DNA from: Dicyema japonicum
Taxonomy: Eukaryota > Animalia > Dicyemida
NCBI GenBank assembly: GCA_011109175.1
Contig: RDEW01000037.1
Location: 189,891-253,890, forward strand
Direction: 5' to 3'
DNA length: 64,000 nt
This document shows positions 8,367 through 51,607 of the stretch, piece by piece; within the stretch, counting starts at the first letter, position 1, and each line of letters begins with the position of its first letter. The position numbers and the translations under genes are program-made. The notes under the pieces are model-generated. The model did not search any database and was not told the origin of the DNA. It worked only from the letters and a program-made list of their open reading frames with translations.

Positions 8367-9773
8367 TCATTTTTTATTTAAAAGTCTTCTTTTTAGTTCT
8401 TTTCTAAGTAAGTCACGTTCCTGTTCTGTTCCGTTTAGAATAGACGAGTTTTCCGAAGCCCTTCTTGATAGGTATGGAAGGACGTCCATTAGATTACCAT
8501 AGGGGACACTCTTGTAGACGTTGTATCCGGTAATCCCCATTAGGAATGTTATATTGTCTGATAACCCATAGAGCTGTCCGAATGACACGTTTTTGTTAGT
8601 TGGTTCTATTTCTAGCTCCTCCATAAAGTCTATTACTTTGAGGATTGATTTTTCATTGTGAGTGGCGGCTATTACACTATACTTGTCAGTTTTTTTTGAT
8701 ATTCTAGTCAAAATATGGTGGATTGCCTTATCGTATATTTCTGATGTCCTTTCAAATGATTCATTTATTGGACTTTCCTTGTTATTTTTCTTAGCTGTCC
8801 TGTTTTCAGAATCCATGTAGGCTCCACGCACAATCTTTGAACCCCAGCACCGTCCGAACGAATCTAAGATCTTCATTTCTTCAAGAATAGAGTCAAATGC
8901 AGTCTTCAGATAACATTGGTGAGTATTCCATACCATTGGTTTTAGTATATTGTGCTTAATCATAAGGGCAACTGCAAATAGTTGTATTCCTCTGTTGATG
9001 ATCATGTATTCTGCATCCACCAGCAATCTCACTCCTTCGTTGATGGCATTATCTCCAAATTGTCTAAGACAGCCGACTGCATTGGTCAGAAAAAGTTGTT
9101 CACTTGGACTTAGAGTACTGAAAATAGTCTGTTCTATGCTTATATTGTCCTCTGACATTAATTTTGACAACTCAATTGCATACATGTTAAAGTTCTCCAA
9201 TGTACCCGTCCTTGTACCAAACTCTGCTAGTAAAGACTGTGGAGCAAACGCAGTCATTTTGAAATGAATCATTGGAACCACGTGAACACACAATTGACGA
9301 GCAATTTTGACACAATTTAAAGAATTTGCAAGATTTGTGAGTAATTTGTTGTGATATTTCCCATTTGTCATGTTGGCCAAATCTTCTTCAGAGGCTAGCA
9401 TTAATAGGATGCTGATTCCTGATTGGTTCAGTCTGAGAGATACTTTAGCAAGCTCTTCGTTGGTCTCTCCTCCAGCAAATTGTCCATATATCGTCGACTT
9501 GATCAAATACTTGAAGATTCGTTCTCCCAGAATAAATTTCCCAGCTTTCATGAGGAAAATGGCGTTCAATGAAATGAACCGAAATGAGCAAAGGTAAAGG
9601 ACCGAAAATGATCTAATAATTTCAACGTTGGACTTCATTTGTAGGGATTTTTCAATATCAGAAAAATTGGGCTTCACGAATTTTAAATCAACTTTTTTTA
9701 ATTTTTTCTGATATTCGACGACATTTTGGCTTCTTTTCCAAGGAATCAACGCATTTTCTTTAACAGAAGTCAC
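8367..9773 (-). CDS. PRODH2: Mitochondrial proline/hydroxyproline dehydrogenase (PRODH2-like), single uninterrupted ORF
   Basis: 468-aa ORF with YGQFAGGET, LLVDAEY, WNTHQCYL, KIVRGAYM, ATHNE, FGQLYG and YKSVPYG..PYLSRRASEN. The PRODH family call is firm; the PRODH2 subtype is inferred. Confidence 0.93.
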   Translation of the reverse strand: MTSVKENALIPWKRSQNVVEYQKKLKKVDLKFVKPNFSDIEKSLQMKSNVEIIRSFSVLYLCSFRFISLNAIFLMKAGKFILGERIFKYLIKSTIYGQFAGGETNEELAKVSLRLNQSGISILLMLASEEDLANMTNGKYHNKLLTNLANSLNCVKIARQLCVHVVPMIHFKMTAFAPQSLLAEFGTRTGTLENFNMYAIELSKLMSEDNISIEQTIFSTLSPSEQLFLTNAVGCLRQFGDNAINEGVRLLVDAEYMIINRGIQLFAVALMIKHNILKPMVWNTHQCYLKTAFDSILEEMKILDSFGRCWGSKIVRGAYMDSENRTAKKNNKESPINESFERTSEIYDKAIHHILTRISKKTDKYSVIAATHNEKSILKVIDFMEELEIEPTNKNVSFGQLYGLSDNITFLMGITGYNVYKSVPYGNLMDVLPYLSRRASENSSILNGTEQERDLLRKELKRRLLNKK

Positions 9774-10029
9774 AAAAGGCTTAAAAAACGTACCAGAAAA
9801 CTAAATTCTAACAAAATTAACTACTTTCATCAAAACAAATAAAAATTGGCTATTCTTTCGATTTTATACGTATATAGAGACGTCATGATAAAACAATAAT
9901 ATTTAAAGTATACTTAATTATCCTCATGATTTATTATTTTAGTAACATTTAAAAGTAATTTTCATCCCCATGAATTAGATTCACAACGACTTTCAATTAC
10001 TATTAATATTACTTTAATCACAACACTTT

Positions 10030-11117
10030 ATTCATCCAAACATGCGATTCGTGACGTTAAAACTCTCTCGAGTTGATAAAAATGTTGAAAGGAAAAAAGG
10101 AGAAGGGTCACTTGCGTTACCAGATGGTATGAATATAATTCTTGCCATATCCGAGAGCGTTGTGGCAGCTGACCCAAAAGAATGGACGAGACAGGTAGTC
10201 CTGCAGGTACGTAGCAGGCTATCCCGAATGCCCTGAAATGGTTGGCCATACTTGGCGGAGCTCTGCAATGGCAGATTCAGTACTGCTATATCTGTGAGTG
10301 AACTCAAGAAAATGGCTATAGACAAAGAGGGTACTGGTCTAAGATGATCACAACTGTCAAAAAAATCACGAGCACCAGAGCTGTGATATGTTGCAGCTCA
10401 AGCATGTTTATGAGGGATTCGCGCGGAATCTCGCTGCAGCGGCAGAAGTCCCACTTGAGGACCGTAGATTTATCCGCAAGATCCCTCATTGTAAGGTTAA
10501 CGGAGTAGTGTTAACCTGTATCAATAAGGCTGTGGCTTATGCGGTAGAGGCTATGCCAGTAGGGTCACTGGGTGACATTTCCCTAGTGATGTGATCCCTC
10601 ATTGTAAGGTTAACGGAGTAGTGATAACCTGTATCAATAAGGCTGTGGCTTATGCGGTAGAGGCTATGCCAGTAGGGTCACTGGGTGACATTTCCCTAGT
10701 GATGTATGCAGCACAGATCACCTATGGGATTCCTGATTGGGCCTGCACCGGGACAACTTATTTGATTCCAAAGCTGGACAACCCCCAGTATGCTGCAGAT
10801 TATCGACCGATAACCTGGATGCCAACCCTGTATAAGCTGATGACCAAATTGGTGGCTAATGAGGTCAGGAATTTTGTAGAAGCAAATGAGATTTTCTCCG
10901 AGAATCAGTTGGTTACTGTGCAAAATTGTCAAGGGGCAAAAGAGCAAGCTTTAATCAACAAGTGCCTTTCTGTGTCTCACGGAAACTCACTTTTGTCTAT
11001 GTGGGTGGATGTGAAGAAGGCTTACGATTCAGTTGATCATTTTTACCTTGTCGAGTGCCTACACAGTCTGCGTATGCCTGTGTGGTTCAACAGTTTTGTA
11101 GTGGCTGTGATGAATAG
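10030..11117 (+). mobile_element. R4/Dong-like non-LTR retrotransposon, RT N-terminal part
   Basis: GTTYLIPK..ADYRPIT..YKLMTK..GAKEQ..VDVKKAYDSVDH. Carries a 113-bp internal duplication and ends at a gap. Confidence 0.85.
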
Positions 11118-11708
11118 NNNNNNNNNNNNNNNNNNNNNNNNNNNNNNNNNNNNNNNNNNNNNNNNNNNNNNNNNNNNNNNNNNNNNNNNNNNNNNNNNNN
11201 NNNNNNNNNNNNNNNNNNNNNNNNNNNNNNNNNNNNNNNNNNNNNNNNNNNNNNNNNNNNNNNNNNNNNNNNNNNNNNNNNNNNNNNNNNNNNNNNNNNN
11301 NNNNNNNNNNNNNNNNNNNNNNNNNNNNNNNNNNNNNNNNNNNNNNNNNNNNNNNNNNNNNNNNNNNNNNNNNNNNNNNNNNNNNNNNNNNNNNNNNNNN
11401 NNNNNNNNNNNNNNNNNNNNNNNNNNNNNNNNNNNNNNNNNNNNNNNNNNNNNNNNNNNNNNNNNNNNNNNNNNNNNNNNNNNNNNNNNNNNNNNNNNNN
11501 NNNNNNNNNNNNNNNNNNNNNNNNNNNNNNNNNNNNNNNNNNNNNNNNNNNNNNNNNNNNNNNNNNNNNNNNNNNNNNNNNNNNNNNNNNNNNNNNNNNN
11601 NNNNNNNNNNNNNNNNNNNNNNNNNNNNNNNNNNNNNNNNNNNNNNNNNNNNNNNNNNNNNNNNNNNNNNNNNNNNNNNNNNNNNNNNNNNNNNNNNNNN
11701 NNNNNNNN
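11118..11708. other. Assembly gap (N run)
   Basis: Run of N. Confidence 1.
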
Positions 11709-11864
11709 TTTTCCAACACTTTGGACACTGTAGAAGCAGGGTCATCTTTTGGCTTTCCTGTTTTTAAAATAAGCGAATCATGAAATTCAGATATTTTGGA
11801 GAACATGAGTGTTGATAAAATAATTGTAAAACTCCGTTAATGCAGCTTTAGCTCGCGGTACGAG

Positions 11865-12500
11865 ATTATTATTAGCACTTTCACGAGAGCCATAATATTT
11901 ATATGTGCAGCAAAAAATAAAAGAAAATTAGTTAGCTTGCTCCAAGCTCTTCTGTTCTTAGCTAAGTCTTCCAGTGTTTTCTTCACGGCTTTCAGATCGT
12001 TTTGTAAAACAACCGGGATGGGTGTTTTCGGTCTTCCACGAAAGCGTTTTATATTGGAGGATCACTAATCTTCTATTGCGATATTCGAGGGGATATCGGG
12101 TCCAACCTCAGGACGTGTCCAAAAAGTCTCCAACAAAAGCTAATGATCTCGTGACTTAATGATGTACAGTCACACTTATTTTACACTCCTTTCCGCAAGA
12201 TCTTGGATGGCCAGGTCATTCCAGTAATGTTTCTTAGATGATTCCTGTGCAACGATTCTAGCTTCTTTAATTCTTCTTTTGAGGTGCCCCAAGTCCCAGA
12301 GTTGTATAGGAGGATTGGTTTGATAAAGGTGTCGTATAACATTATCTTTTGTTTTATGTTATTCCTTTCCGTTTTAGCCATAGGTTTTTCAGCCTGTGTA
12401 ATGCCGCGTTTGCCATGGTTTTTCTCCGTATGATATCTTCACTATCTTTTAATAGGGAGCCATGATTCTTTGTGTGTCTCCATTTCTCTTGATGGTCGAG
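11865..12500 (-). mobile_element. RTE-clade LINE 3' portion
   Basis: IMLYDTFIKPILLYNSGTWG..HRNHLRNITG..FFGHVLRLDPISP. Same family as 28440-31860. Confidence 0.8.
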
Positions 12501-13110
12501 AGTGGAGGGTGATGATTTCTCCAGTTTTGCCAAGTGTTTTATTGACGTAGCTGCCTGGCGTAGACAGGCTTCGATTTTCAGACAGTTCGTCCATGAGAGG
12601 TTTATTCCCCATGAAGCGCAGGCATAGGCAATGGTTGGCTTAATGAATTGTCTGTATAAGGATCCAAGGGGTGGAAAAGGATTATTTAATAGATCTCCAA
12701 ATAGCGATTTAATCACTCCAATTTCCTTCTGGCAGGTCCCGATGGTCTTTTCAATATGGGGAGAAAGACACATATTGGCATCGAATATGATACCCAAAAT
12801 CTTTGGGTTCTTTGTGAAAGCGATTTTGATGTTGCCAATGTATAAGTCAATATATCTGTTTCCGAGCCTTTTATCAAATGTGAACAGAGTGTACGACGAC
12901 TACTCAGGGGAAACTTCCAGACGATTGTGCCTAGGCAGTTTTGCATTTTTTTCAAGGAGTTCTTGGGTTTTCTTTGTTGCACGTATCACATCTTGATCGC
13001 GTGCTCGAATGAGCAGATCGTCTGAATATGCAAGGGCAATTTTATTTTTGGCTTCCGAATTAGGCAGGTCGGACAGAAAAGGCCCAGAGACGACGGAGAG
13101 CCTTGGAGAA
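12500..13110 (-). mobile_element. Jockey/I-like RT C-terminal fragment abutting the RTE
   Basis: YSDDLLIR, KILGIIFDANMCLSPHIEK and LYRQFIKPTIAYACASWG. Confidence 0.7.
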
Positions 13111-13294
13111 CTCCATTTGGTAAAAGTCTACCACAATCGGATTACAATTGAGGAATAAATTGAGAAAATAGGGGATAATTTAACTTTTTACTTAAAATAA
13201 ATTATCATATAATTTAAAATAAAATTTAAAATTTACCCGGCTCGCTTAAGTGGTTTTAGTTGAACTCAGTATTTTAGTTATTATTTTGACATTT

Positions 13295-16061
13295 ATGAAT
13301 GAAAAATATTATGACTCTGAAATCACCAAAAATGTTTTATCTAAATTTTACGAATTAGGAAATTTGGAATGACAATCTTCTTAAAAGAAACTCAAGTGAA
13401 TCAAAATTAACCATACGTTCTAATAATTTTCTCAAATATAGTCCTTCTTCTACCAAGGTACAATTTTCTCTGCTTCCTCCAGTCGTCCTTTATAAAAAAT
13501 GGGATAGAAAGACTGATCGACCTCGAAACTTTCAAACAAGCAATGACTCCGCCAAATTCTTCCTCAAAAACTCCTGATAAACTACCTCCCATCAGTTCAC
13601 CATGTCAGATAGCGAGATCTCCAATCAAATCAAGGCCAACAAGTCGTCAGAGGAACGCCAACTTCCGGCGTCTCAACATGAAGAGACAGTATCACCCACG
13701 TGGCAGGAGAAAGGGGACTAAATTTCCTCGATACAACAGACGGAACATCCGTGATTGGCCTAATGCAACCCAGTCACAATTTGACGGTACTACCATAATA
13801 TGCATTGCAGACGATTTTTTGTGCCATTCATCCGCAAATCCGTTAAAACTTTGTGAGAGCTGTCCTACAGAAGGAGATCCTGGTGACTTGTCGCAGCTCG
13901 AATATCAAGTTCTCGCTCAAATTCTTCAAAGTATCCATTATTTGTAATGTAGGTCAGTCTGTCCTAGCAAATTTGTTCGGTCTTCCATCCGTGCTAAACA
14001 TTTTGGTTGAATCTGCCAGCCAGTTCAGTAGTCTTCGCCAGTCATTCGCCCTCATCTTTGTTGATGATCCCTTTACGACTGAAATGCCACAACTGGTTTA
14101 TGTAGGGGTCATTTTATAGCATTTTAACCGATCAATTCGCTGTATTGATACATTTATGACATACCAGCAGGTCAAATCTACGATTGAGCAACTTTGTGAA
14201 CCTTCAGTCATTGCCTTGGTAGTCTCAGCCAAGGTGGGTCTTAGGACTCTTCCTTTAATCACTGAAACACGTAGACCGGTCTCATTTGTTGCGGTCGTGG
14301 ATGCTCATAGAATTCTTGATATTCCTGAATTTTCCGAAAATATCAGCGATGTAGTTCAGTTCATCAGGGGTTCTTATGGAATTTCACAGTTCTGTGCCTT
14401 CACCTATCTCGTCGATTTGGCCTTGACGCAAAAAATAGCTGAAATGTTTAATGCTTATAGAACTATCTCCAGTAATCAGCAGGTACACCAACTGAACTGC
14501 TATATCTCCTCAAAACTTGATTACCAGGTTACCAAATTACTCATTTCAGACTCTTCTCTCGCTTTTAAGGAGAATTCGATCAAAATTTTCATCTTTTGTG
14601 GTGGTTTGTGATACCACTGCAAGAGTGGACTTTATACACAGTTATATTTGCAGGACCAGATCTTTCAGTATGTCGTTTTAAATTTTGATAGAATCCATAA
14701 CCACAGTTCACCATTATTCTCCGAGAAATCACCGACTTTCCGTGTTCAAAAACCCTCAAGTTGAGTTTCTGATCACCACAGAACGGTTTGCCCGGTTTTT
14801 TCTGACGGAATCTACTAATACTGGTATCATGACCAAACATTGTAGCCTTTATTTGCTTTGGGGTACCTCAATCCCACGAGTTCTTCCTTTCGTCTCTTAT
14901 TTTTATGAAAAACGTCTTTCTGATTATCCCACCTGACGATGTATCTCCTTGGGTTTACTTAGGCTGTTATATACAACAACCTCTGCCGTTGTTCGTACGA
15001 GTTGTACGTGGACAAATCTCAGCTCAGGGATTTTCTAAACAACATTTTTAGTGACTCCAGGAAGTACATATTTGTGTCTTCAGTCATTAATGATGACTTT
15101 GATTTGCCTCAGAATGGTTTAATTGGGGCATATTTTAGTAATCGGCAGGATTTGCTCGACTATTCAATCCTTTGTGGGGTTCAAAAACTTTTACAAAGTC
15201 TCCAACGGAGCTTTTAGACGCTGTATGATCAGATTTATTGGGGACACAGCAGATTGGGAATATTTGTGCTCAAAGGTTTATCCTTGATTTATTGGTGGAA
15301 CTCCTTCCTATCAAAGATTTTTGACTACGCGAAATCTATGATGACTCAGCTCTCATTCGATATTCTTCGTGGGGAACAGGTCTTGTACCCTACTGAATTG
15401 GATTTGGATGTTGTGGACTTTTGTAACGCATGTGGGTACGATATTGGGCAGATAGTGACTGCCTTGTATTCTCTGAAATGGATTCATCATGAGGATGGTG
15501 TTTGCTGGTGTGATTGTAGGTTTGGTTACGAAATCCGGGGTGATACTTGAGATGAGTGATTATGGCTGTGCTTATGTCCACCAACCAGAGATTTTTTCTT
15601 CTGATTTGGTGGAAAACTTGTTTCAGGACATTTGTGACTGTCCGTTGAATATCAGTCGAGGAATTGAGCATGCTTTGCTTATTTATAACATTATCGGGTT
15701 GTGTTGGTCGTTTAATTTTAGCAATTCTGAGGGGGAGGTTGGTTTTCGTAACGTGGAAAGAGATCACATCGAGAGGACTATTATGCTGTTTAATGAACGA
15801 AAACTTGAAAAAGTTGAGTTTCCTTGGAGTCACTCTGATTTGGAGGATTTAGTGGGACGATTTGTAAGGAAGTACCACAATGTGCCCTCGTTGACTGGCA
15901 GAGTAGTGGCGATGATTTTACATGGAATCGGAACGCCTCTTTTTCCAACGTTCATTTGGAAGTCTGTTAAGGAATTCTGGCAGCAGGGACTTTGTTATGA
16001 TTTTATATCTGTAATGAACTGTGCCCATCATTTGTTACATATTCAATCACTTGATATTTAG
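13295..16061 (+). CDS. RECQL4: RECQL4-like protein with a degenerate helicase core (probable pseudo-helicase)
   Basis: Spliced frame with micro-introns (e.g. 13334-13358, 13458-13482) has NFRRLNMKRQYHPRGR (human NYVRLNMKQKHYVRGR), CIDTFMTYQQVKS, PVSFVAVVDAH, TLLSLLR, LDVVDFCNACGYDIGQIVTALYSLKW and the C-terminal TGRVVAMILHGIGTP..FW signature. Confidence 0.88.
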
Positions 16062-16363
16062 TTTTATAATTGTGCTAATATTATATTCTCTATGTTTACT
16101 ATAATCTAAATCAGTGTGTCCCTTTTGAAAGACAAGAAACTCGAAGAATGGAATAAAGAGATGACTGACTTTTCAATTTAATTTTGTTGTGTTCCAAATC
16201 AAAATTGTTTGCTAAATATTTTCATGGTTTTTCGAACTTATCAAAAAGGTAAATTTATTGCGCGTTCAAAATAAATTTTTTGTGGTGATTAGTACATTTG
16301 TTTTTACTGATCATAGTCAACATCCCCTTAGTGCCTACTTAAAATAGTGGTCACGTAGGTGCA

Positions 16364-16705
16364 GTGATCCAAGGGTTGTTTGGCACTCAGGAAATTGATT
16401 CAAGACTCCCATATTCAGTGTCTAAAGTGGACTGCCCACGAATCTCATACTTTTGCAAGCGATCATCCCTAGGTTTCACCGATTTAAAAAAACGATTTGA
16501 TATAAAATTCAAAACCTTAAGAGGATCAGCAGATAAAAATCAAAGTCGCCAAAAATATGCTGTTTCATACAAAGCTTTGATGACAAAAAATATTTATGAA
16601 AATTGGCTATCTTGTATTAACCAAGAAACGAGAGAAAGAAGAAAAATAGCATTACTGATAGATAATGCAACTTGGCTACTTTTATCCAACGGTGTCCAAT
16701 ATTAA
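16364..16705 (+). mobile_element. Tigger/pogo DDE transposase remnant
   Basis: ALMTKNIYENWL..RKIALLIDNA, a pogo DDE_1-type motif. Confidence 0.55.
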
Positions 16706-18033
16706 AACATTTTTTATAAGGTTTTTTAAAAAGACCCTCATTTTCGGGTAAAATGTGTTTCTGTTGTTGGACCCTCATTTTCGGAGAAAACCTTATACCC
16801 ATCAACCAACAATAATAAACACGTGTCGAGTAAACAATTTGTTATTATTTTTCCTCACTTATAAACTCAGTTGTACTTATTGAGATAATGCAACAAAATC
16901 AATAAAAATTATCATTTATTGATTTTGTTGCAGTCATCAACTAAATAAGAACCTTTAGAATTATTTAAATCGTCAGGAATTCAATTTTAACAAGCAATTT
17001 AACAAAATTTGTTTAAAAAACTCAGAAAATTGGATTTACAGTCGTGGGTTCAAATCTGGACTTTTCGATTGTCAATTCTTGTCAAAACAGATTCTACTCG
17101 TGAGGCGACGAGTCTTTCTGTCACGACATAGTTGTTGAAAGGGTCTCCCTACCTTCTCCCTGACCAAATCCACTAGTGAAGATAACATTATGAAAACTTT
17201 TTCACCTATTAGTGAATTGATAAGCGTAAGAGGTGCGATGAAAATGGAAGAAGGCGGACCGGACCTACTTCTTTACCTCTCACAAAAGCGGAAACCTGCA
17301 ATGGACTCTTGGATAATGAATTTAGTTTACAAAAGAAGAAGTTCTCCATTGGATTCTTTCCTTGGATCAATAACCTGTGATCTTGTGCTGGACTTACCAA
17401 GATTGTAAGCTTCATTTCATAGAAGAGTTTCCATGGTACAGATGAAGAAATTTTTTATTATCGCATGACTCTGCTCTACTTGGATGAGTGAGGGGAAAAC
17501 AGGGGAAAAGAAGGGAAACCTTCCGTCAAGTATCTTCAACGGGAATCGAACCCAGGATAACAAAATTGATCTNGTAAGCTTCATTTCATAGAAGAGTTTC
17601 CATGGTACAGATGAAGAAATTTTTTATTATCGCATGACTCTGCTCTACTTGGACGAGTGAAGAAAAAAACAGGGGAAAAGAAGGGAAACCTTCCGTCAAG
17701 TATCTTCAACGGGAATCGAACCCAGGATAACAAAATTGATCTTTTTTTCAATTTTCAATAGATTGTTAAAATTCGTAGTCCAGTTCGCAAAAATTGATGA
17801 AGTCATCCATGCCCTTTTAGAATTGTAATAAAAAACTATAGAATAATAATCATATTTAAATTTTTAAAAATGTTGGCAAATATCAATAAAAAATAAAAAA
17901 AATCGATAAAAATTGAAATTTTAAGAGTGGAATATTTGAGAGAGTTTACTGCATTACGAAATCCTAACTACAGAGTAAATTAAAAATTATTGATAAAAGT
18001 AGTGAATCCAACGTTTTATGAAAAAAACCATTA

Positions 18034-19690
18034 TTAGTTAATAAGTAATTTTTTGAACCGCAAAACATTTAAGATGGATGTCCTCAAAAAGTCGATGTGT
18101 TCATTCTTATCTCCATGAGTAATCTTAAGCATGTTCACGGTCTAAATAGTCCCAATATTTTCTCACCTCCGAATATAACTTTTTTGTAACCGGAAGCCCG
18201 AGATATCCCCTACAAGTTATTATTTTATAAGCCAGCATAGACATATTGGAAGTTATCCCATAAAACATTCTACTTTGATTAAAATTCAACTTGATTCGAT
18301 CGTATATACTTTCCAAAGAACTCAATCCTCCTCGGATATCATTAACTGTGATGAGAAACGATGATAGGTAATATTTCAAATTCGTATAAGATTCGATCGT
18401 ATATACTTTCCAAAGAACTCAATCCTCCTCGGATATCATTAACTGTGATGAGAAACGATGATAGGTAATATTTCAAATTCGTATAATGAATGTGAGTGGT
18501 CGGAAGGAGTCCATTTGTTCAAAGTTTCTATAATTTGTGGAATAGCAGACTCGTCGAAATCTGTTTCTCTACAAATTTGTTAATAAATTACATCTGGGAT
18601 ATTAATTCACCGCATTCTTTACACATCTGGCGACGCTGCTCTAAATATTTCTCATCCACGTTGAAATCACACGTTCTACACCGATTTGATAAGTCCACCA
18701 AGCCTGTCTGGCATGAGGGACATTTAGTAGCATTGATTTCAGCATCAAAGTCATCGTCTTTGCAGCGGGGACATTCACAAGTAAAGCAATAATGTTCTAA
18801 CTTGGCATGCCTGTCTGCTCTATTTTTCATTTTGTCAGTATAGCATATGTAAATATTCTGGAAGTTACGATAAAACCAACCCCCACATCAATATTATCTA
18901 TAGCGACGACTGTCAGTTGAATTCCTTCGTATCTAATAATCGCGTTAGGCACGCAGGAATGGTCATATTTTGAGGCGCTAGAATAACCGTAAATATTAAC
19001 AACTTTAGGTAAAGACCAAGCCCTTCCTTCACGAAATTCGTGTTTTCTGAAATTGTGAATGCGTTGCTGTACATTTTACAGTAAATATCGAAAGTTGTCT
19101 TTACAGTCAGGGAATCGTCGATATCTACGATGTATCTTAAGGCAGAGATGAAAGTTAACTTAAAAATATCTGTCAAAAACTCAGAATCTAAGCAGATTAT
19201 AATAACGGAGTCACTTGAGACCAAATCATTGAATGATCTTTCATCTGAGTCTTTTTGATCCAAAGTCCCTAATTTGTGCTTCAAATAAAATTACAGAATA
19301 CCATTACGATGAGTTGGAAGAATAAACGAGTTTGATCTGAGGGGACTCCTCGAACAAGCTTACTACACTCAAATTTATGGTTTTGCCAAGATTTTTTCTA
19401 AGTTTACAAATTTGTAAAACTTGGCAGGCTAAACTGCAGTAGTAAGGATTTTGCAGTTTTTACATCTTTTGAGATTTGATTCTGCAAAACACCATGAACA
19501 TTTTTTCGCAAGCAATTTTCGTGTCACAACATGAGCCAACAGAAAAGATTGGACGATAATGTCTCCTGGTTTATACGACCTCATGATTTGTATATTTTAA
19601 TCAAGTTTAATAAACAAAAAAATACGTTTTGACTGTTAATAGTCCAATGGAACGAGTAGTGGAGTGGTAGACAGAAATATCTTCATATAT
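18034..19690 (-). CDS. SMYD: SMYD-family SET and MYND domain methyltransferase (frameshifted as assembled)
   Basis: MYND CSWCF..CKNCKIL(YY)CSLACQ..W..HKFEC, SET YSNAFTI..GLYLNASKYDHSCVPNA, post-SET YCFTCECPRC, C-terminal LKITHGDKNEH, and several 22-28 nt introns. A 1-nt frameshift near 19445 and a 97-bp duplication interrupt it. Start codon not identified. Confidence 0.8.
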
Positions 19691-20409
19691 GAGGGACCTC
19701 CGTTAAGTTGATCATTATTAAATTTATTTCATTAGAAAATGCAGACCTAATAGATTTTTTTATATTTGTGGTTTATTAAACAATTTGGTGATAAATGATA
19801 TTAGTAATAATTAAGGCGATTTTGAATCAATGTCAAAAGTGTCGGACAAAATTCAGATGGTTCCGACTTTGAATATCACTGCTGTACATTCCGGTAAAAG
19901 TTCTATGCATCAACGATGCTTAGGATTTTAAAAGTGACACCGTTATTAGTGAATACCTTACTGTGGGACCGGATCTTTTATAAGAACTCACCTGCTAGGA
20001 TTAGTAATGTTTCTATTACTTGAACCTCCGATTAAGTAGAACTCGTAATTTATCTAAGAAAAAAAGAACAGTAATGAAAATCAATCCAAGACATCAAGGG
20101 ACTTGTTTTTATTTTTTGCTTTCATGTGATGTCTAAATAATCGATAATGCTAACATAAATCAGATAAATAATTTTCATTAATATGCATATTTCCAGGTCG
20201 CTTTTATCACATAGCACAATCTTCGGAGACTAGATTTTGCATTAGGGACCCAGCAAATGATTAGTTAGGGATGTTTTCTATCGCACCTTAAAGTTCAGAA
20301 TATGGCATCTAAAAAATAATGCCATAACAACTAAAAACAATAAAAAATCAACATTTCAACCTCAACTAACTTTAGCTTATTTTATTAAAAAAGTCAATAT
20401 TTAAAAAAT

Positions 20410-21254: not shown

Positions 21255-23390
21255 ATTTAATCAACAACATTCCTCGCCTGCCTGTTCGCCAGCCTCCTCA
21301 GGCAGGTTCGATTCTGGTTGCTGAAACAACTCCGAGAGCGCCTTTTCCAATTGAACCCTCTGCCCATATGGCATCTCAGGGCTCTGCTTCCTATACTCCA
21401 GTGTCAGGCTCTCTAGGGTCCGCTTTAACACAGTGGACTGTAGATAGGCCTNNNNNNNNNNNNNNNNNNNNNNNNNNNNNNNNNNNNNNNNNNNNNNNNN
21501 NNNNNNNNNNNNNNNNNNNNNNNNNNNNNNNNNNNNNNNNNNNNNNNNNNNNNNNNNNNNNNNNNNNNNNNNNNNNNNNNNNNNNNNNNNNNNNNNNNNN
21601 NNNNNNNNNNNNNNNNNNNNNNNNNNNNNNNNNNNNNNNNNNNNNNNNNNNNNNNNNNNNNNNNNNNNNNNNNNNNNNNNNNNNNNNNNNNNNNNNNNNN
21701 NNNNNNNNNNNNNNNNNNNNNNNNNNNNNNNNNNNNNNNNNNNNNNNNNNNNNNNNNNNNNNNNNNNNNNNNNNNNNNNNNNNNNNNNNNNNNNNNNNNN
21801 NNNNNNNNNNNNNNNNNNNNNNNNNNNNNNNNNNNNNNNNNNNNNNNNNNNNNNNNNNNNNNNNNNNNNNNNNNNNNNNNNNNNNNNNNNNNNNNNNNNN
21901 NNNNNNNNNNNNNNNNNNNNNNNNNNNNNNNNNNNNNNNNNNNNNNNNNNNNNNNNNNNNNNNNNNNNNNNNNNNNNNNNNNNNNNNNNNNNNNNNNNNN
22001 NNNNNNNNNNNNNNNNNNNNNNNNNNNNNNNNNNNNNNNNNNNNNNNNNNNNNNNNNNNNNNNNNNNNNNNNNNNNNNNNNNNNNNNNNNNNNNNNNNNN
22101 NNNNNNNNNNNNNNNNNNNNNNNNNNNNNNNNNNNNNNNNNNNNNNNNNNNNNNNNNNNNNNNNNNNNNNNNNNNNNNNNNNNNNNNNNNNNNNNNNNNN
22201 NNNNNNNNNNNNNNNNNNNTAAAAAGAAGGTGATTTGTACTGAAACAAACCCCCTCACAATGAACTGGTATTTGCTCAAACCGGTCATTGAGGCAGCGAC
22301 TCAATGGCTACCCTCATGGAGTAGAGCTCCTCGGCTGTTCGAGCATACATCTTCAGGTCATCGATAAAAAGAAGGTGATTTGTACTGAAACAAACCCCCT
22401 CACAATGAACTGGTATTTGCTCAAACCGGTCATTGAGGCAGCGACTCAATGGCTCCAAACAGAGAACAAATAGCAGCGAAGACATGTTATCCCCCTGAAG
22501 GATCCCCCTTTTGAGTTTTACCTCGCCTATCCGGTGCCTATTATAATTCAGATGAATTCTCCACCTATTCATCACAGCCACTACAAAACTGTTGAACCAC
22601 ACAGGCATACGCAGACTGTGTAGGTACTCGACAAGGTAAGAATGATCAACTGAATCGTAAGCCTTCTTCACATCCACCAACATAGACAAAAGTGAGTTTC
22701 TGTGAGACACAGAAAGGCATTTGTTGATCAAAGCCTGCTCTTTTGCCCCCTTACAATTTCGCACAGTACCCAACTGATTCTCGGAGAGAAACCCATTTGC
22801 TTCTACAAAGCTCCTGACCTCATTAGCCACCAATTTGGTTATCAGTTTATACAGGGTTGGCATGCAGGTTATCGGTCGATAATCTGCAGCTGACTGGGGG
22901 TTGTCCAGCTTTGGAATCAAATAAGTTTTCCCGGTGCAGGCCCAATCAGGAATCGTTTCCGGGTTAGTGATGCTTTTCTGTAATACACGACACATAGACA
23001 GACTGGGGGTTGTCCAGCTTTGGAATCAAATAAGTTGTCCCGGTGCAGGCCCAATCAGGAATCGCTTCCGGGTTAGTGATGCTTTTCTGTATTACACGAC
23101 ACATAGATTCGTGCAATGAAGTACATCTTTTAATAAAGAAGTTATACACTTTATCTACCCTGGTCATTTTTCAATCAGGGAGACGTCTCACTACCGCTTC
23201 AAATTTCTTGCGAAAATCGAAAATTCCGCAAGATTCCGCCAAGAAAGGAGCGGCGCTGTACGGGACATTCCACGCATTTCCTCTGCGTGGTTTAGCCTCT
23301 CCACATACTACCCCATGTGGAAAGCATTTCCGCGTCTTGCTGGGAACATACACTATGGCCATTTTCGTGTAGGCGACGGTAAAACAATCG
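21255..23390 (-). mobile_element. R4/Dong-like non-LTR retrotransposon spanning a gap
   Basis: ORF 22285..22995 has RT motifs DYRPITC, DVKKAYDSVDH, GILQGD and LLFIDDLK. C-terminus AYLQSTVLKRTLES lies at 21261-21450. Confidence 0.88.
21452..22219. other. Assembly gap (N run)
   Basis: Run of N. Sequence beside the gap (22220-22315) repeats 22365-22450. Confidence 1.
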
Positions 23391-28440: not shown

Positions 28441-31400
28441 GGATATCGGGTCCAACCTCAGGACGTGTCCAAAAAATCTCCAACGAGAGCTAATGATCTC
28501 GTGGCTTAATGGTATACAGTTATTGTACAGTCCATTCCGCGAGATCTTGGATGGCCAGGACATTCCAGTTATGTTTCTTAGATGATTCCTGTGAAATAAG
28601 TCTAGCCTTTCCAATTCCTCTTTAGAGGTGGCCCAGGTCCCAGAGTTGTAGAATTGGTTTGATGAAAGTGTTGTATAACATAATCCTTTGTTTTATGTTA
28701 TATCCTTTCCGTTTTAGCCAAAGATTTTTAAGCCTTTGTAATGCCGCATTTGCCAATGTTTTTCTCCGTATGATGTCTTCGCTATCTCCTAGTAGTGAGC
28801 CAAGTTTCTTTATGTGTCTCCATTATTCTTCGAGTGAGTTGTTCATTCGTCTTATCTCTGTCCGTTCTGTTTTTCCCTGTTCACGGTGACAAACCATTTT
28901 CCAAGTATATCTGGTGCTTTTTTCTCCAGGAGTTCTTTGTCTTCAGAAATTAAGTCGACATCATCAGCATAAATCACTTCTTCTATTTTTCCTTGATATA
29001 ATGGTCTCAGTTCCCTCATAGCGGCCTCCAAGTATATTGTGAATAGTAGGGGAGAAAGGGAGTTTCCTTGAGGAGTGCCTGTGTTTGTTTCAAATTTTCT
29101 TGAGTAGGTTTTTCCAACTCTCACAAGGAGCTCTGTGTTAGATAGAAGGATTTGAATCATTCTTAGACTCGATTCGTCAATAAACCCATCCAGCACTGTC
29201 ATCAATTTGTTCCTGTTAACCGAGTCAAAGGCTTTTGATAGATCTATTCCCAGAATGTGGATGGAATTGCAATATCTTTGATGTGTTGCACATCTCCATC
29301 TGTGACTCCAGACTGCATCAGCTGTTGATCTTCCTTCTCTGAACCCACTTTGACTTTCGGGTAGGTATTCATAAGCGGGTCCTTTTATTCGTTCCAATAC
29401 AATGTTAGCTAAGACTTTCCGTAGAGAATTTGATAATATGATTGGTCGTAAGTTTTCAACCGGTCCTTTGGGTTTATTGGGTTTTTGTATAGGTATTAGT
29501 AATCCCGTTCCCAGGGGCAAGGTTGAGTTAGTTGAAAACATTTCATTTAGTAGTGTAGCGATTTTTTCAAAAAGGGGGTCAGGCCCGTATTTCAGTAATT
29601 CTGGGTTTATCGTATCTGGTCCAGGGCTTCTGTTATTTTTTAATTTTTGACATGCTGTTTTTACTTCCAAAATTGAAATTGGTTCTTTTAAAGGTCTAGG
29701 CTTTCCTTTGAATGGGGGGATTGCTGTAGTCACATTAAAAAGTTTCTCAAAATGTGTTGCAATTACCTCCGCTTGCTCTTCAGTATTCAGTAATGTCTTG
29801 CCATTTTTGTCTTTGATGATTATTCGTTCCTTCCGGTTTGTGTGGCGTAGTAAACGAGCGGCCATATACATTTGTGAATTATTCTTTAGTTTGGATACTT
29901 CATTGATTTTGCGAAGAAGTTCTTCTTGGTGAAGTGTCTTGTTCAGTCTCCTGATTTTTCTACGGATTTGGTCACTCTGCCCTTGAAGGACTTTTCTCAT
30001 GTTATAGTCTTTTTCGATTAGTTTTTTTGTATGGATTTCCTTTAACTCCTTTGCTAATTCCTTTACTAGTTCTGTATGTGTCGTCAGACCCTTACTGGCC
30101 ATCTCCCGCGTGCCGAGGTACTGGCTTGCTGCTTCGTTTATTATATACTTCGTGTGATCCTACGAAATTCCTACTGTTTGGTCCTTCAGATAAGAGCAGA
30201 TGTGTTTTTGGTAACTTTTGACTGTGTCTGGATTTTTTTTTAAAATTTTTGGTGTATTTAATTAAAACAATAGAAGTCAGGTAGTTGCCGCCCTCACTGC
30301 GTGGCTGTTCCCTCTCAAAATTGCGAGCGAAATTCGCTCAAATAGCCAGCGGCGTTCACGGAGATCTCCAGTGCATGAGGTGATCCGGTTTCCAAGACGT
30401 CCGAAAAACTCGAGTGTAGAGGGGGAGTAGGATCCGGAAGTCTCCATAGCAAGGGGAACAAATTTGACATCATCGGGAAGGTCGACGTATTTAACGAGTT
30501 TGGCCTTCTCCGCCTTTACGGATGCTGAACAGGCCCTTGTAGCACTCTCGTGAAGATTTTTCTGGGCGAACGTGTCTGTACATGTCACATCCCAAACCAG
30601 TGGTTTCCCGGCCTCAAATGGAAATATGGTCATCCCGTCCGGTCGTTTCCCGTCACTTCTGCATAACCCGACCGGTTCAAGAATGGCCGAGTATCCAGCA
30701 GCATCCATAGCTCGCCTGACAATTTCATTCAGAGCCTTGTGCCTTGGGGATCTGCCAGCGCTCCTCCTGCAGGCGGAGGGTGCAGGCCATAGGAGTCTAT
30801 CAGGATGCCACATCGGCACGGGTGAGGTACACATACTTTTAGTCCCAGCCGCAGAGAGATATCAGTTCTAACGCATTCATCATCCAGAAAAGTGCCCAAA
30901 GCTCCATTGGGGAGATCAGTTTCCCGTTGCCTATGTGTCTGGATTAGAGATCAGTTTTTCCGTTGCGTATCCATTTCTTGTATTCTCAATATTATAGTTT
31001 GTAATGTTATTATGTTTCTTATGTTTGATGTTTCGCCAGGCTGAAGGTGACAATAACCATTCTGTGATCGCTGACAGTTGTTGAACCTTCGTATGAGCGT
31101 GCGTTAATAAGAGAGCATTTGTCATTGATCCGGCATATAATATAATCAATTTGGTTGTATATAGGGAATAATTTTCCTTCTGGGTTTCTTCGTTCGCCCA
31201 TCCAAGTAGTTATTTGGAATGCACGATGAGAGAATGCAGTGTTGCACAAGAACAGTTTGTTTGCCGTGCAGAAATGGCCAAGTATAGTCCCAGGCAAGTT
31301 TCTTTTCCCACGTCCATGTCTTCCCATGAAGATATCTTCTGAGTTCTTTTTTGTTCCGATTTTCGCATTCAGATCGCCAGCAATGAATATAAGTGAGGAC

Positions 31401-31860
31401 GACTCATATTCATTATACGTCTTTGATAATGCTGAGTAGAATTCATCCAGTTCGGTCGGGTTTTTTGCCACTCTTCCACAGTGTGGTGCATATACATTTA
31501 TAATCGTTAGTGTATTTTTAGGGGAACATTGATTGTTCAAGTGGATCTGTATTACGCAGATCCTGTCATTCACCCGCCAAATGCGACTGATGTCAGATGA
31601 TAGTTTTCTGTGAATGGCGAATCCAAGACCATAGTGTTTTGAGTCACTGGGTAGACATATTAGACGATATCTTCCGTGGTTTTCATCGAGATAGTACGTA
31701 ATTTTCGTCTCTTGTATACAGCCAATAAAAACGTTATATCTTTCTAGGTCATCACAGAGAGTATTTATTGACTGAGGCTTAGATATTCCTCTAGCATTGA
31801 ATGTAAGAAACTTTAGGGCAAGCATATTCTTTTGTATCTTCTGCTTTCTAGACATTTTCT
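28440..31860 (-). mobile_element. Near full-length RTE-clade LINE (APE endonuclease plus RT), interrupted and frameshifted
   Basis: APE at 31019..31855 (LTFNARG, IQETK, INVYAP, GDLNAKIG, IDYI, SDHR), RT at 28852..30102 (SPGPD, RPI, QSGFR, DLSKAFD, PQG, YADD), C-terminus to 28440. Confidence 0.93.
30235..30933 (-). mobile_element. 5'-truncated CRE-like element inserted into the RTE, with poly(A) and a 12-bp TSD
   Basis: RLE domain (CRRSAGRSPRHKALN, KRPDGMT, WDVTC, FVPLAMET, ERISLAILRGN). TSD tgtgtctggatt at 30223-30234 and 30934-30945; T-run at 30233-30241. Confidence 0.92.
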
Positions 31861-41953: not shown

Positions 41954-43835
41954 CAGTCAAACCCCTCTAAACCGATTCCTCTCGGGACCGACATAATTGT
42001 CCGGTATTGAGGGGAGGCCTGTATATTGAACAAGTCATTACTTATAACAAAAAAGTGAAACAGTAAAATTAATAGAAATCTGTCAATAAGGATTGCCTCG
42101 AATTTTTCGATTCAGCAATCGCTTTATTGTTCAGATAGATCAGTCTGTTGACGGGATCGAGTAATGCAGAGTCTTGAGTGCAAGCAAAGTGGCAGATTTG
42201 GTCTAGCATTTGTTGAACATTTGTGCGTGTTAATTTCTCTATATGTTTTGGCTCTGTTTACATATCAGAATCTGAGTCACTGTCATAATCTTTAGAAGCT
42301 GAGACTGTTTGATATCGCTCACTAGGATGATTGATTCCCAATCTTTGGGATTTCCAAGTCTAAGTCGACAAATTTGTCTTCTGTCATTAGATTATCGACT
42401 AGTCTATTCATGAGGGTATGAACAGTAAATTGTTTTCAGGATTGTCGTTTATATATATATTTTGACTGGAATGCCACACTTATTAAAGCAGAGGGAGATT
42501 GTGTTTGATTTCACGTCCATCCAAGCTGTGCTAATCCACCGGATAGAAAGAAATTTATTGCAAGTTGTGTCGCATTGGTTTATATGTCTATTTTGGCAAG
42601 AAGTTGAGTCATTAGTAGTCTTCTGTATCTTTCTTTAAATGACCAAATAATTCCTTGATCCAGAGGCTGTATGCCACTCGTTGTGTTAGCTGTAAGAAAT
42701 TTGAGTTCCACGTTGGAATATTTTACGCTTAATGAATGTGATGCTGCATTATCCAAAAACATAATAATTTTAGCATGTTCACATCTTGCAACCATTTTGA
42801 AAACAATTTTGATGTCATCCAGGCTGTAACGTTGGAGCAGTAAATAACAGGTAACTCATTCAGATTAATATTCTTTAAACATCTGGGTTTTCGAGACTTG
42901 CCAATTACAATTGGCTTTAGCTTTTCTCCTGTCGAACTGCAAGCAAGCATTACAGTAAGACGTTCCTTCGACTTCTTTGATCCACTGTGATGATTACCTT
43001 TTACTGATAGTGCTTTATCAGGAAGGGCACGATAGAATAGTCCGGTTTCGTCGCAGTTAAATATATCCTCTGGTCGACATCCTTCAATTAGAAAAGGTAC
43101 ACGTTCTATCCAGTCAGAAACAACATCACTGTTAACATTTGCTTTTTCACCACTGATACAGGATTGAGTAACGAGACTTCCATCTGCATAACCAGCCAGT
43201 GGAAGCTTTAAAATCATTTTCGCCCAGTGCTTTAGCAAACTCTGTAGATTTAGCGATAATAATTGGTGAAACAAAAGTTTTTGGAACGTGCTATCTGGAA
43301 CTACTCCCAAGTGATTTTATTCAAATTTTCAAATTTGCAGTTGTTGTCAAAACGTTTTTTAGCAGAATTTGCGTTGTTATTGAATAATTCCAAATAAATA
43401 TTAGCCTTTTTAAGTATGTCTGATACAGTGCTGCATCCAACTCCATACTTCTTGCTGAGAAATTTTTGTGTCGGCTTAGGTGTTTGGTTCGATTCATTTA
43501 TTATTTGAATTTTCTTCTTTAAAGACAATTCGCAACGTAATCGTTTTCTTTGCTATCATCTTTTAGTTTTTGATTTTCTGTCGAGTTGTTCGCAATTCAG
43601 GGTTAAAGACGATTAATAGGATTAGATCAAAGATTGATGTCAGAAGGCCGGTTTATGATAAAAGAAAATTCAAGTTGGGACCACAAAATACGGCCGGTAT
43701 TCGGAATAGAGGAAATCCGGTATATCGAAGATGAAATAGCAGTGATGGCCTATGAGGTGAATCGGAACCATAAGTTTAGTCCGGTTTAAAGGGAATTCCG
43801 ATATACCGAGGAGTCGGTTTATAGGGGTTTGACTG
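41954..43835 (-). mobile_element. Full-length Tigger/pogo DNA transposon (1882 bp) with frameshifted transposase
   Basis: TIRs cagtcaaacccct[c/a]taaaccga[t/c]tcctc at both ends, TA at 41952-41953 and 43836-43837, HTH-psq (SLKKKIQII..YGVGCSTVSDI), FNCDETGLFY, LDNAASH and QPLDQGII. Confidence 0.93.
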
Positions 43836-51403: not shown

Positions 51404-51607
51404 TTAACCCAATGCCACCATACGATGGATAGCTATTCTAGAGGATGGTGCCTGCCTTCTCCCCTGTAGTATCTTTTCCGTAGCTTTTTGATACAGGGAG
51501 CATCTTAAATGGCTCGCCCTGTGTCCCTCCTCGCCACAGTTCACGCACTTGAGAGACCTGACTTTTGATTGGCAGGCCTTCCGCGAATTTGGACCTCCGT
51601 AATTCAA
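51404..51607 (-). mobile_element. LINE ORF1 (gag-like) Zn-knuckle remnant
   Basis: KCVNCGEEGHRASHLRCSLY. Confidence 0.6.

What the first reader, a model, noticed from the sequence alone, without database searches (positions are those of the whole stretch)
13295..16061. RECQL4 kept as an intact gene but with every helicase motif erased
Seen: the spliced frame is open and keeps RECQL4-specific blocks (RLNMK, R4ZBD-like LDVVDF..ALYSLKW, C-terminal GRVVAMILHGIG). Against the human sequence from memory, Walker A LPTGAGKS reads LFGLPSVL (about 13965-14000), motif II DEAH reads VDAH (14297-14308), motif III TAT reads TYL and motif VI QAVGRAGR reads SSLIFMKN. I also find no N-terminal Sld2-like homeodomain; the protein starts just before a WNDNLL block. 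Known: RECQL4's essential replication-initiation role maps to its N-terminus and not to the helicase. Inference: a naturally evolved scaffold pseudo-helicase.
Basis: partly seen in the sequence, partly recalled or inferred. Interest (0 to 1): 0.8.

Follow-up and report, generated by a model that had tools for sequence, protein, structure and literature searches.

The report
Helicase-dead RECQL4 gene kept by selection
A tiny-intron parasite genome (probably the dicyemid Dicyema japonicum) keeps an intact, selectively constrained descendant of the DNA-helicase gene RECQL4 in which every ATP-binding and unwinding motif, both zinc sites and the N-terminal Sld2 domain are gone, so whatever it does it cannot do as a helicase.

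Summary
Window 13295-16061 (+) is a 12-exon gene with eleven GT-AG introns of 20-25 nt. It encodes about 837 aa.

**Identity.** A profile built from 11 true RECQL4 proteins hits the spliced product at E about 1e-31, colinearly. The matches are the NFxxLNMK block, both RecA lobes (weak but above 1000 shuffles), the R4ZBD winged-helix block and the RECQL4-only C-terminal domain. That last domain keeps 14 of 16 near-invariant residues.

**What is lost.**
- Walker A, Ia, II (VVDAH for IDEAH), III, V and VI.
- The CCHC knuckle and the R4ZBD zinc ligands.
- The Sld2 homeodomain block.
- No + strand frame in or around the gene encodes GxGK[ST], DExH or GRxGR, so alternative splicing cannot restore them.

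**Not a pseudogene.** Twenty coding differences from another sample are 14 synonymous to 6 non-synonymous (pN/pS 0.12, P about 1e-4; 8:2 in the dead core). Two variants that would break the frame both fall in predicted introns.

**Not shown.** Transcription (no RNA run was served), absence of a second intact RECQL4 elsewhere in the genome, and the actual function.

**Reading.** It is a catalytically dead RECQL4, most likely a DNA- or replisome-binding module working through its C-terminal domain. It is a new variant of a known kind. The scan had not noted it before on other DNA.

The parts
13295..16061 (+). Whole gene, ATG to TAG. Twelve exons: 13295-13333, 13359-13457, 13483-13930, 13953-14095, 14120-14600, 14626-14667, 14692-14823, 14846-14940, 14963-15116, 15139-15197, 15218-15497, 15520-16061. 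Product 837 aa.
   Evidence: Model D. RECQL4 profile 97 bits, E 1.7e-31. The only open path with 20-26 nt introns. SNP pattern 14 synonymous to 6 non-synonymous.
13334..13358 (+). Intron 1 (25 nt, GT..TTAG). It joins the ATG exon to the EIWNDNLL exon.
   Evidence: No polymorphism or homology support for exons 1-2, so the start codon is the least certain part.
13458..13482 (+). Intron 2 (25 nt).
13931..13952 (+). Intron 3 (22 nt, ..TGTAG).
   Evidence: The shortest of three frame-restoring options, and the only one of typical length.
14096..14119 (+). Intron 4 (24 nt). Alternative donor at 14102 (18 nt) or acceptor at 14167 (66 nt).
   Evidence: Homology does not separate the variants.
14601..14625 (+). 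Intron 5 (25 nt). Exact ends are uncertain. It holds SNP 14616.
14668..14691 (+). Intron 6 (24 nt, ..GATAG).
14824..14845 (+). Intron 7 (22 nt).
   Evidence: The only solution for the frame change.
14941..14962 (+). Intron 8 (22 nt). It holds SNPs 14945 and 14959.
15117..15138 (+). Intron 9 (22 nt, ..TTTTAG).
   Evidence: The other sample has T>G at 15120, which would make TGA if exonic. Every model open in both alleles removes this stretch.
15198..15217 (+). Intron 10 (20 nt). The rival model uses 15276-15316 (41 nt) instead.
   Evidence: The resulting IYWGHSRL aligns with the orthologues' CYGGxxQL.
15498..15519 (+). Intron 11 (22 nt).
   Evidence: The only solution.
15698..15721 (+). Candidate 12th intron (24 nt, in frame, ..TTTTAG).
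   Evidence: A 2-bp deletion at 15700 in one contig of the other sample is harmless only if this stretch is spliced out. Inference; there is no RNA evidence.
13359..13382 (+). EIWNDNLL. It aligns with the VWG..LN block that follows the Sld2 homeodomain in orthologues.
   Evidence: Alignment. Not significant on its own (E 18).
13654..13683 (+). Conserved RECQL4 block NANFRRLNMK.
   Evidence: Profile hit E 8.5e-6 on this exon alone. 43% identity to orthologues against 44% among them.
13801..13863 (+). The place of the CCHC zinc knuckle. It is Cys-rich but has no CX2CX4HX4C.
   Evidence: Alignment; regex search.
13973..13996 (+). Former Walker A (motif I). Reads LFGLPSVL, with no GK[ST].
14294..14308 (+). 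Former motif II (Walker B). Reads VVDAH in place of IDE[AV]H.
14399..14413 (+). Former motif III. Reads FTYLV in place of LTATA.
14775..14798 (+). Former motif V. Reads TTERFARF in place of ATVAFGMG.
14890..14913 (+). Former motif VI. Reads SSLIFMKN in place of QEIGRAGR. A synonymous SNP lies at 14895.
15038..15067 (+). The place where orthologues carry the R4ZBD zinc ligands (CxC ... CxGH). The loop is deleted and no ligand is left.
15398..15481 (+). R4ZBD winged-helix-like block (LDLDVVDF...ALYSLKW).
   Evidence: Profile hit on this piece.
15888..16004 (+). Core of the RECQL4-specific C-terminal domain (SLTGRVVAMILHGIGTPLFP...FW...DF).
   Evidence: phmmer against 1.8 billion proteins found only RECQL4 C-termini, best E 6.9e-7. 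Profile 68-78 bits. 14 of 16 near-invariant residues kept. AF2 pLDDT 92-97; the fold matches human and mouse RECQL4 C-termini at probability 1.00.
16152..16157 (+). AATAAA, 91 nt after the stop. Likely polyadenylation signal.
   Evidence: sequence only.

Best explanation
This is the RECQL4 gene of a tiny-intron parasite, probably Dicyema japonicum, by descent. It is still a translated gene kept by purifying selection.

What remains and what is lost. The two RecA-like lobes remain as a scaffold of the right length, with hydrophobic strands in the right places. Every residue set that binds or hydrolyses ATP or couples it to DNA is replaced: motifs I, Ia, II, III, V and VI. Both zinc sites and the Sld2 homeodomain are lost. 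The protein therefore cannot be an ATPase or helicase.

Likely mechanism (inferred). The selected function is non-catalytic binding through the parts still conserved at normal RECQL4 levels. These are above all the last 60-90 residues, plus the R4ZBD winged-helix block and the NFxxLNMK basic block. In vertebrates the last 92 residues bind ssDNA, and the structured C-terminal part of the protein tethers RecQL4 to the Mcm7 winged helix of CMG independently of ATP hydrolysis. The most likely mechanism is therefore a DNA or replisome tether, or adaptor.

Shown: identity, intactness, motif loss, selection. Inferred: loss of activity, and the tether function.
For: Identity.
- The colinear profile hits of the separate exons are the top-ranking of 533 ORF pieces from window 9000-20000 and five of the six best of 3655 from the whole window.
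- The spliced model scores E about 1e-31.
- The proteins used for the profile are RECQL4. They carry Drc1-Sld2 + zf-CCHC + DEAD + Helicase_C. One hits 5lst_A at 8e-186 against 1e-58 for other RecQs. Two are named helicase Q4.
- The C-terminal exon finds only RECQL4 C-termini in 1.8 billion proteins. Its model superposes on human and mouse RECQL4 residues 1118-1207 and 1145-1214.

Core homology. Profile score 4.7 bits against a maximum of 4.0 in 1000 shuffles; pairwise z up to 7.8. Exon 5 is 160 aa against 159-169 in orthologues.

Motif loss. Only 22 of 90 near-invariant core columns are kept, against 14 of 16 in the C-terminal domain. No + strand frame in or around the gene encodes GxGK[ST], DExH or GRxGR.

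Intactness. The gene is threadable with only 20-26 nt introns, unlike every control.

Selection.
- 14 synonymous to 6 non-synonymous differences, pN/pS 0.12.
- Expected synonymous count is 5.9 given the same mutation types, P 1e-4.
- The dead core alone gives 8:2, pN/pS 0.07, P 2e-4.
- Both frame-breaking variants fall in predicted introns.

Literature.
- ATP-binding-dead Recql4 mice are normal, while truncations that also remove the C-terminal domain are not (PMC6636780).
- The RecQL4 C-terminus binds the Mcm7 winged helix, and the last 92 aa bind ssDNA (bioRxiv 10.1101/2025.08.05.668837).
Against: - No RNA evidence. All runs that hold the locus are DNA contigs colinear with the genome, so splicing and expression are inferred.
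- The selection test rests on 20 coding differences taken from assembled contigs of what may be a pooled sample. Up to 5 further differences were not displayed; the worst case still gives P 2e-4.
- Several intron ends (4, 5, 10) are ambiguous.
- The rest of the genome could not be searched for a second RECQL4 or a separate Sld2 gene.
- Vertebrate work places the essential function in the N-terminal 480 aa (PMC13076768), and the Sld2 part of that region is missing here.
- The exon-5 fold model leans on the orthologue alignment.
- The organism's name is inferred, not read from a record.
Confidence: 0.72

Rival explanations
1. It is a degenerate paralogue. An intact, motif-bearing RECQL4 (or a separate Sld2-like gene plus an Hrq1-like helicase) sits elsewhere in the genome, and this copy has taken up a side function.
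For: The Sld2 homeodomain block is absent from the gene and from the whole 64-kb window. That domain's function must be supplied from somewhere or be dispensable. The gene is boxed in by transposon debris, which would fit a relocated copy.
Against: - The published genome is strongly reduced (5,012 genes, PMC6736024), so retained duplicates are less expected.
- The scan's notes on this genome mention no other RecQ.
- The copy has normal introns for this genome, so it is not a retrocopy.
Confidence: 0.15
2. It is a decaying pseudogene whose frame has not yet been broken.
For: All catalytic motifs are lost. There is no Pfam hit on any exon. There is no RNA evidence. One contig carries a 2-bp deletion and another allele a potential TGA.
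Against: - An 837-codon frame stays open across 11 phase-correct micro-introns in a 60% A+T sequence. Shuffles and other regions cannot be threaded at all.
- pN/pS is 0.12 overall and 0.07 in the core.
- The C-terminal domain keeps 14 of 16 near-invariant residues.
- Both 'breaking' variants lie in GT..TTTTAG stretches of intron length.
Confidence: 0.04
3. It is still an active ATPase or helicase. Either the motifs are hidden by a wrong gene model or alternative exons, or unconventional residues substitute for them.
For: Intron ends 4, 5 and 10 are ambiguous. Dicyemid proteins evolve very fast.
Against: - No + strand frame in or around the gene encodes GxGK[ST], DExH or GRxGR.
- The motif positions lie inside long exons whose frames are confirmed by third-position SNPs.
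- Walker A has no Lys or Gly-Lys at all, and motif VI has no Arg.
Confidence: 0.03
4. It is not a RecQ4 relative at all, and the blocks are chance resemblances.
For: Single exons give no Pfam hit and no RecQ hit by phmmer in the PDB.
Against: Five colinear profile hits and E about 1e-31 for the spliced product. An exhaustive search returns only RECQL4 C-termini. The fold matches human and mouse RECQL4.
Confidence: 0.01

Closest known systems
Animal RECQL4 (human O94761, helicase core solved as PDB 5LST; arthropod 'ATP-dependent DNA helicase Q4' P0015 and P0043)
   Same: Same order of parts: VWG..LN-like block, NFxxLNMK block, two RecA-like lobes of matching length, R4ZBD winged-helix block and the RECQL4-only C-terminal domain. 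That last domain is 39% identical, and its predicted fold superposes at 1.5-4 A.
   Different: No Sld2 homeodomain, no CCHC knuckle, no helicase motifs I-VI and no R4ZBD zinc ligands. About 837 aa against 1000-1340. Core identity 18% against 50% among the other animals.
Engineered helicase-dead RECQL4 (mouse Recql4 K525A, PMC6636780; Xenopus RecQL4 D856A, bioRxiv 10.1101/2025.08.05.668837)
   Same: A full-length protein without ATPase activity that still supports physiology or replication. The structured C-terminal half has an ATPase-independent role (Mcm7 winged-helix binding).
   Different: Those are single point mutants that keep the Sld2 N-terminus and all other motifs. Here evolution has removed every motif and the Sld2 domain.
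Split or truncated forms: yeast Sld2 plus Hrq1, C. elegans SLD-2
   Same: They show that the Sld2 part and the helicase part of RECQL4 can be separated in evolution (PMC13728148).
   Different: In those lineages the surviving helicase part (Hrq1) is catalytically active, or the helicase part is simply deleted (SLD-2). Here the helicase part is kept but dead, and the Sld2 domain is the part that is missing.
Other natural pseudohelicases (yeast Utp25, Deinococcus radiodurans PriA; titles and abstracts)
   Same: Helicase folds retained with degenerate motifs and used non-catalytically.
   Different: Unrelated families. The literature searched gave no report of a RecQ-family example.

Membership tests
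RECQL4 / RecQ4 lineage (membership by descent) | Colinear similarity to RECQL4 over the whole length | tested here: met
   Profile of 11 RECQL4 proteins against the spliced product: 97 bits, E 1.7e-31. The separate exons hit profile columns 205-274, 458-588, 735-763, 850-899 and 1001-1080, in order.
RECQL4 / RecQ4 lineage (membership by descent) | RECQL4-specific extreme C-terminal domain (absent from other RecQs) | tested here: met
   phmmer against 1.84 billion proteins gave 43 hits, nearly all at the extreme C-terminus of their proteins; the eight full-length ones checked all have RECQL4 architecture. 14 of 16 near-invariant residues are kept. Foldseek probability 1.00 to human and mouse RECQL4 C-termini.
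RECQL4 / RecQ4 lineage (membership by descent) | NFxxLNMK basic block before the helicase core | tested here: met
   NANFRRLNMK at 13654-13683; exon-level profile E 8.5e-6.
RECQL4 / RecQ4 lineage (membership by descent) | N-terminal Sld2-like homeodomain (Pfam Drc1-Sld2) | tested here: not met
   No block of the type LK.WE..F...GRKP in the gene. A Sld2-only profile finds nothing below E 1.9 in six frames of the whole window. Only the following W..xL(N) block may remain.
RECQL4 / RecQ4 lineage (membership by descent) | CCHC zinc knuckle, and the R4ZBD zinc site (CxC...CxGH) | tested here: not met
   No CX2CX4HX4C in any + frame. The loop carrying the R4ZBD ligands is deleted.
RecQ / SF2 helicases (functional class) | Walker A GxGK[ST], motif II DExH, motif III [ST]AT, motif VI QxxGRxGR | tested here: not met
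   All are replaced. None is encoded in any + strand frame in or around the gene. It should therefore not be filed as a helicase.
RecQ / SF2 helicases (functional class) | Two RecA-like lobes | tested here: inconclusive
   Lengths and hydrophobic strands align. The AF2 model of exon 5 has pLDDT 70, and its best PDB matches are BLM and RecQ cores at TM 0.52-0.55, but it leans on the orthologue alignment. ESM features are weak, though all named hits are SF2 families. The whole spliced protein could not be folded.
RecQ / SF2 helicases (functional class) | ATP hydrolysis and DNA unwinding | not testable with these tools
   Needs recombinant protein.
Pseudoenzyme (pseudohelicase) | Descends from an enzyme family, catalytic residues lost, yet under purifying selection | tested here: met
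   Descent and loss as in the rows above. pN/pS is 0.12 overall and 0.07 in the core. 14 of 20 coding differences are synonymous against 5.9 expected.
Pseudoenzyme (pseudohelicase) | Expressed as RNA and protein | not testable with these tools
   Only DNA runs were served for this locus; no joints were seen.

The most novel reading that the evidence does not exclude
This is the animal's only RECQL4. A metazoan has then dispensed with both the ATPase and the Sld2 homeodomain while keeping the C-terminal domain, the R4ZBD block and the NFxxLNMK block under selection. That would be a natural separation-of-function allele. It would show that the structured C-terminal half of RECQL4 carries a selectable, helicase-independent job, for example tethering to CMG through Mcm7 or binding ssDNA. 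It would also show that the Sld2-type function can be lost or taken over, for example by MCM10 or DONSON.
Probability: 0.4. Interest if true: 0.75.

Novelty: new variant of a known kind. Interest (0 to 1): 0.62.

Why it matters
What RECQL4's helicase half is for is an open question.
- Helicase-dead mice are normal.
- N-terminal fragments support replication.
- Yet truncations that also remove the C-terminal domain are pathogenic.
- Recent Xenopus work finds an ATPase-independent, Mcm7-binding role for the C-terminus.

A lineage where selection itself has stripped the ATPase and the Sld2 domain but preserved the C-terminal domain points to which parts carry the non-catalytic function. It also gives a minimal natural protein to test.

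The locus further shows how much core replication and repair machinery a roughly 5,000-gene parasite can hollow out. And it is a worked example of using population variants to validate micro-intron gene models when no RNA data are available.

Tried and rejected
- **Pfam on seven separate ORF pieces:** nothing.
- **phmmer of three exons against PDB sequences:** only noise. One call failed on a frame slip. The C-terminal domain is not in 5LST, which explains the blank.
- **RNA evidence:** both run searches returned only runs of one organism. When laid, they are DNA contigs colinear with the genome, with no joints.
- **Fewest-introns path:** gave a wrong model with introns of 16-88 nt. It was replaced by local enumeration, homology and polymorphism.
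- **Homology scoring of intron variants:** could not choose among the variants of introns 4, 5 and 10.
- **First model without intron 9:** put a TGA in the other allele and was rejected.
- **Foldseek of the C-terminal model against the PDB:** nothing significant.
- **Supplement of the genome paper:** does not list RecQ genes.
- **The scan's notes:** hold no other RecQ or Sld2 finding for this genome.
- **Left out on purpose:** folding or searching the whole spliced protein.
- **Not spent:** The search for homologous proteins. Its length window excludes full-length RECQL4 for exon-sized queries, and the exhaustive search had already shown no close relative in the collection.
Full report
**Setting.** The window is A+T-rich eukaryotic DNA (GC 28-43%). 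It contains LINE and DDE-transposon debris and genes cut by 20-25 nt introns. Among animals, such introns are reported only for Dicyema japonicum and myxobolid myxozoans (PMC13644364; PMC6736024). Earlier agents of this scan also took the genome for D. japonicum. I did not read the name from a record, so it stays 'probably'. The gene lies between LINE reverse-transcriptase fragments (10591-13140) and a DDE_1 transposase remnant (16364-16705). A proline dehydrogenase gene lies further upstream on the other strand.

**Gene model.** The three + frames show open stretches that change frame every 45-480 nt. At each change there is a GT...AG stretch of 20-25 nt.
- For five of the frame changes the solution is the only one found, or the only one of typical intron length.
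- Nine of the eleven introns end in TAG.
- The final model has 12 exons and 837 codons, from ATG 13295 to TAG 16059-16061.
- As a control, I asked whether an open path exists using only 20-26 nt GT-AG introns. The gene needs 11. None of 40 dinucleotide shuffles, the reverse complement or 21 other equal-sized chunks of the window can be threaded at all.
- The ends of introns 4, 5 and 10 remain ambiguous, and homology scores do not separate the variants.

**Is it RECQL4?**
- Single exons give no Pfam hit and no RecQ hit in PDB sequences.
- The last exon (179 aa), searched with phmmer against 1.84 billion proteins, gave 43 hits (best E 6.9e-7). Nearly all lie at the extreme C-terminus of their proteins, which range from 78-aa fragments to full-length proteins of 1000-1340 aa.
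- The eight full-length hits checked all carry DEAD and Helicase_C, seven carry zf-CCHC and five carry Drc1-Sld2.
- One of them matches human RECQL4 (5lst_A) at 8e-186, against about 1e-58 for other RecQs. Two are named 'helicase Q4' by their sources.
- A profile built from 11 of them finds colinear hits in the gene's exons. These are the top-ranking of 533 ORF pieces from window 9000-20000 and five of the six best of 3655 from the whole window.
- The same profile scores the spliced product at 97 bits, E about 1e-31.
- The helicase core contributes little, but more than chance: 4.7 bits against a maximum of 4.0 in 1000 shuffles, and pairwise z up to 7.8.
- Exon 5 has the same length as the matching orthologue segments: 160 aa against 159-169.
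- An AF2 model of the last exon has pLDDT 92-97 over the last 80 residues. It superposes on the C-termini of Arabidopsis RECQL5 and of human and mouse RECQL4 at probability 1.00. No solved structure holds this domain.

**What is lost.** Alignment to the 11 orthologues gives these readings.

| Feature | Orthologues | This protein |
|---|---|---|
| Walker A | PTGxGKS | LFGLPSVL |
| Motif Ia | SPL | DDPF |
| Motif II | CIDE[AV]H | VVDAH |
| Block after motif II | WSHNFRPSY | EFSENIS |
| Motif III | LTATAT | FTYLV |
| Motif V | ATVAFGMG | TTERFARF |
| Motif VI | QEIGRAGR | SSLIFMKN |

- The CCHC knuckle is not recognisable.
- The loop with the R4ZBD zinc ligands (CxC...CxGH) is deleted.
- Of 90 core columns that are at least 10/11 identical in the other animals, this protein keeps 22. 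In the C-terminal domain it keeps 14 of 16.
- The hydrophobic strands that lead into each motif are still there (for example SFVAVV for ISFVCI, IKIFIFC for SIIIYC). This is the usual look of a pseudoenzyme that keeps its fold.
- The exon-5 model (pLDDT 70) best matches BLM and RecQ cores, but it leans on the orthologue alignment.
- No + strand frame in or around the gene encodes GxGK[ST], DExH or GRxGR, so alternative splicing cannot bring the motifs back.
- The protein starts 13 residues before EIWNDNLL. That block aligns, without significance of its own, with the VWG..LN block that follows the Sld2 homeodomain.
- A Sld2-only profile finds nothing in six frames of the whole window.

**Gene or relic?** No RNA run is available. 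The four runs laid are DNA contigs colinear with the genome. They differ from the window at about 1% of sites, and several haplotypes are present.
- Of 24 differences inside the gene, 4 lie in introns, 14 are synonymous and 6 non-synonymous. That gives pN/pS 0.12, binomial P 4e-6.
- Keeping each difference's mutation type, 5.9 synonymous are expected and 14 are seen, P 1e-4.
- The dead core alone gives 8:2, pN/pS 0.07, P 2e-4.
- If the up to five undisplayed differences were all non-synonymous, P would still be 2e-4.
- Two variants would destroy the frame if exonic. T>G at 15120 would make TTA into TGA, and a 2-bp deletion sits at 15700 in one contig. Both lie in GT...TTTTAG stretches of 22 and 24 nt. 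The first forced me to add intron 9. The second suggests a 12th, in-frame intron.
- Together these results reject a neutral relic and independently confirm the reading frames of most exons.

**Mechanism.**
- Shown: descent from RECQL4, intactness, loss of all catalytic, zinc and Sld2 elements, and purifying selection.
- Inferred: without a P-loop lysine, the Walker B Asp-Glu pair or the motif VI arginines (established SF2 biochemistry, my knowledge), the protein cannot hydrolyse ATP or translocate.
- What selection can still see are the blocks kept at ordinary RECQL4 levels: the C-terminal domain, the R4ZBD winged-helix block and NFxxLNMK.
- In vertebrates the last 92 residues are needed for ssDNA binding, and RecQL4's structured C-terminus binds the Mcm7 winged helix. 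That binding recruits RecQL4 to the pre-activation CMG independently of ATP hydrolysis (bioRxiv 10.1101/2025.08.05.668837).
- ATP-binding-dead Recql4 mice are normal, while truncations that also remove the C-terminal domain are not (PMC6636780).
- I therefore favour a non-catalytic DNA or replisome tether.

**Limits and verdict.** Three things are open.
- Transcription is not shown.
- The rest of the genome was not searched, so a second intact RECQL4 or a separate Sld2 gene cannot be excluded.
- The function is inferred.

Natural pseudohelicases are known in other families. I found no report of a RecQ-family one. It is a new variant of a known kind and moderately to highly interesting.

The whole spliced protein could not be handed to the fold and search tools, because it has no reference. 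That step was left out.

Noticed in passing
window 10591-13140 and 16364-16705: The gene is boxed in by transposon debris. Upstream are LINE reverse-transcriptase fragments (Pfam RVT_1), with read depth 4-7 times that of the gene. Downstream is a DDE_1 transposase remnant. The unique sequence upstream of the ATG is only about 165 nt.
   Followed up: partly
window 8367-9773 (-): A 468-aa open frame with a strong proline dehydrogenase match (Pfam Pro_dh, 2.6e-47). It is the nearest ordinary gene upstream.
   Followed up: no
window 15120 and 15700: Two population variants would break the frame if exonic: T>G making TGA, and a 2-bp deletion seen in one contig only. Both sit in GT..TTTTAG stretches of 22 and 24 nt. 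They work as natural evidence for micro-introns where no RNA data exist.
   Followed up: yes
window 15263-15316: An 18-residue insertion relative to all 11 orthologues (GIFVLKGLSLIYWWNSFL) in the R4ZBD region. It may hide a further intron or a lineage-specific loop.
   Followed up: no
window 51407-51679 (-): A weak hit (E 0.1) to the zinc-knuckle columns of the RECQL4 profile. It is probably the Gag knuckle of a retroelement, not a second RECQL4 piece.
   Followed up: no
window 16152-16157: AATAAA 91 nt after the stop codon, a plausible polyadenylation signal for the gene.
   Followed up: no
window 21261-22995, 28852-31855, 42729-43310: Further retroelement and DDE transposase open frames (RVT_1, Exo_endo_phos, DDE_1). 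This fits the high repeat share reported for D. japonicum.
   Followed up: no
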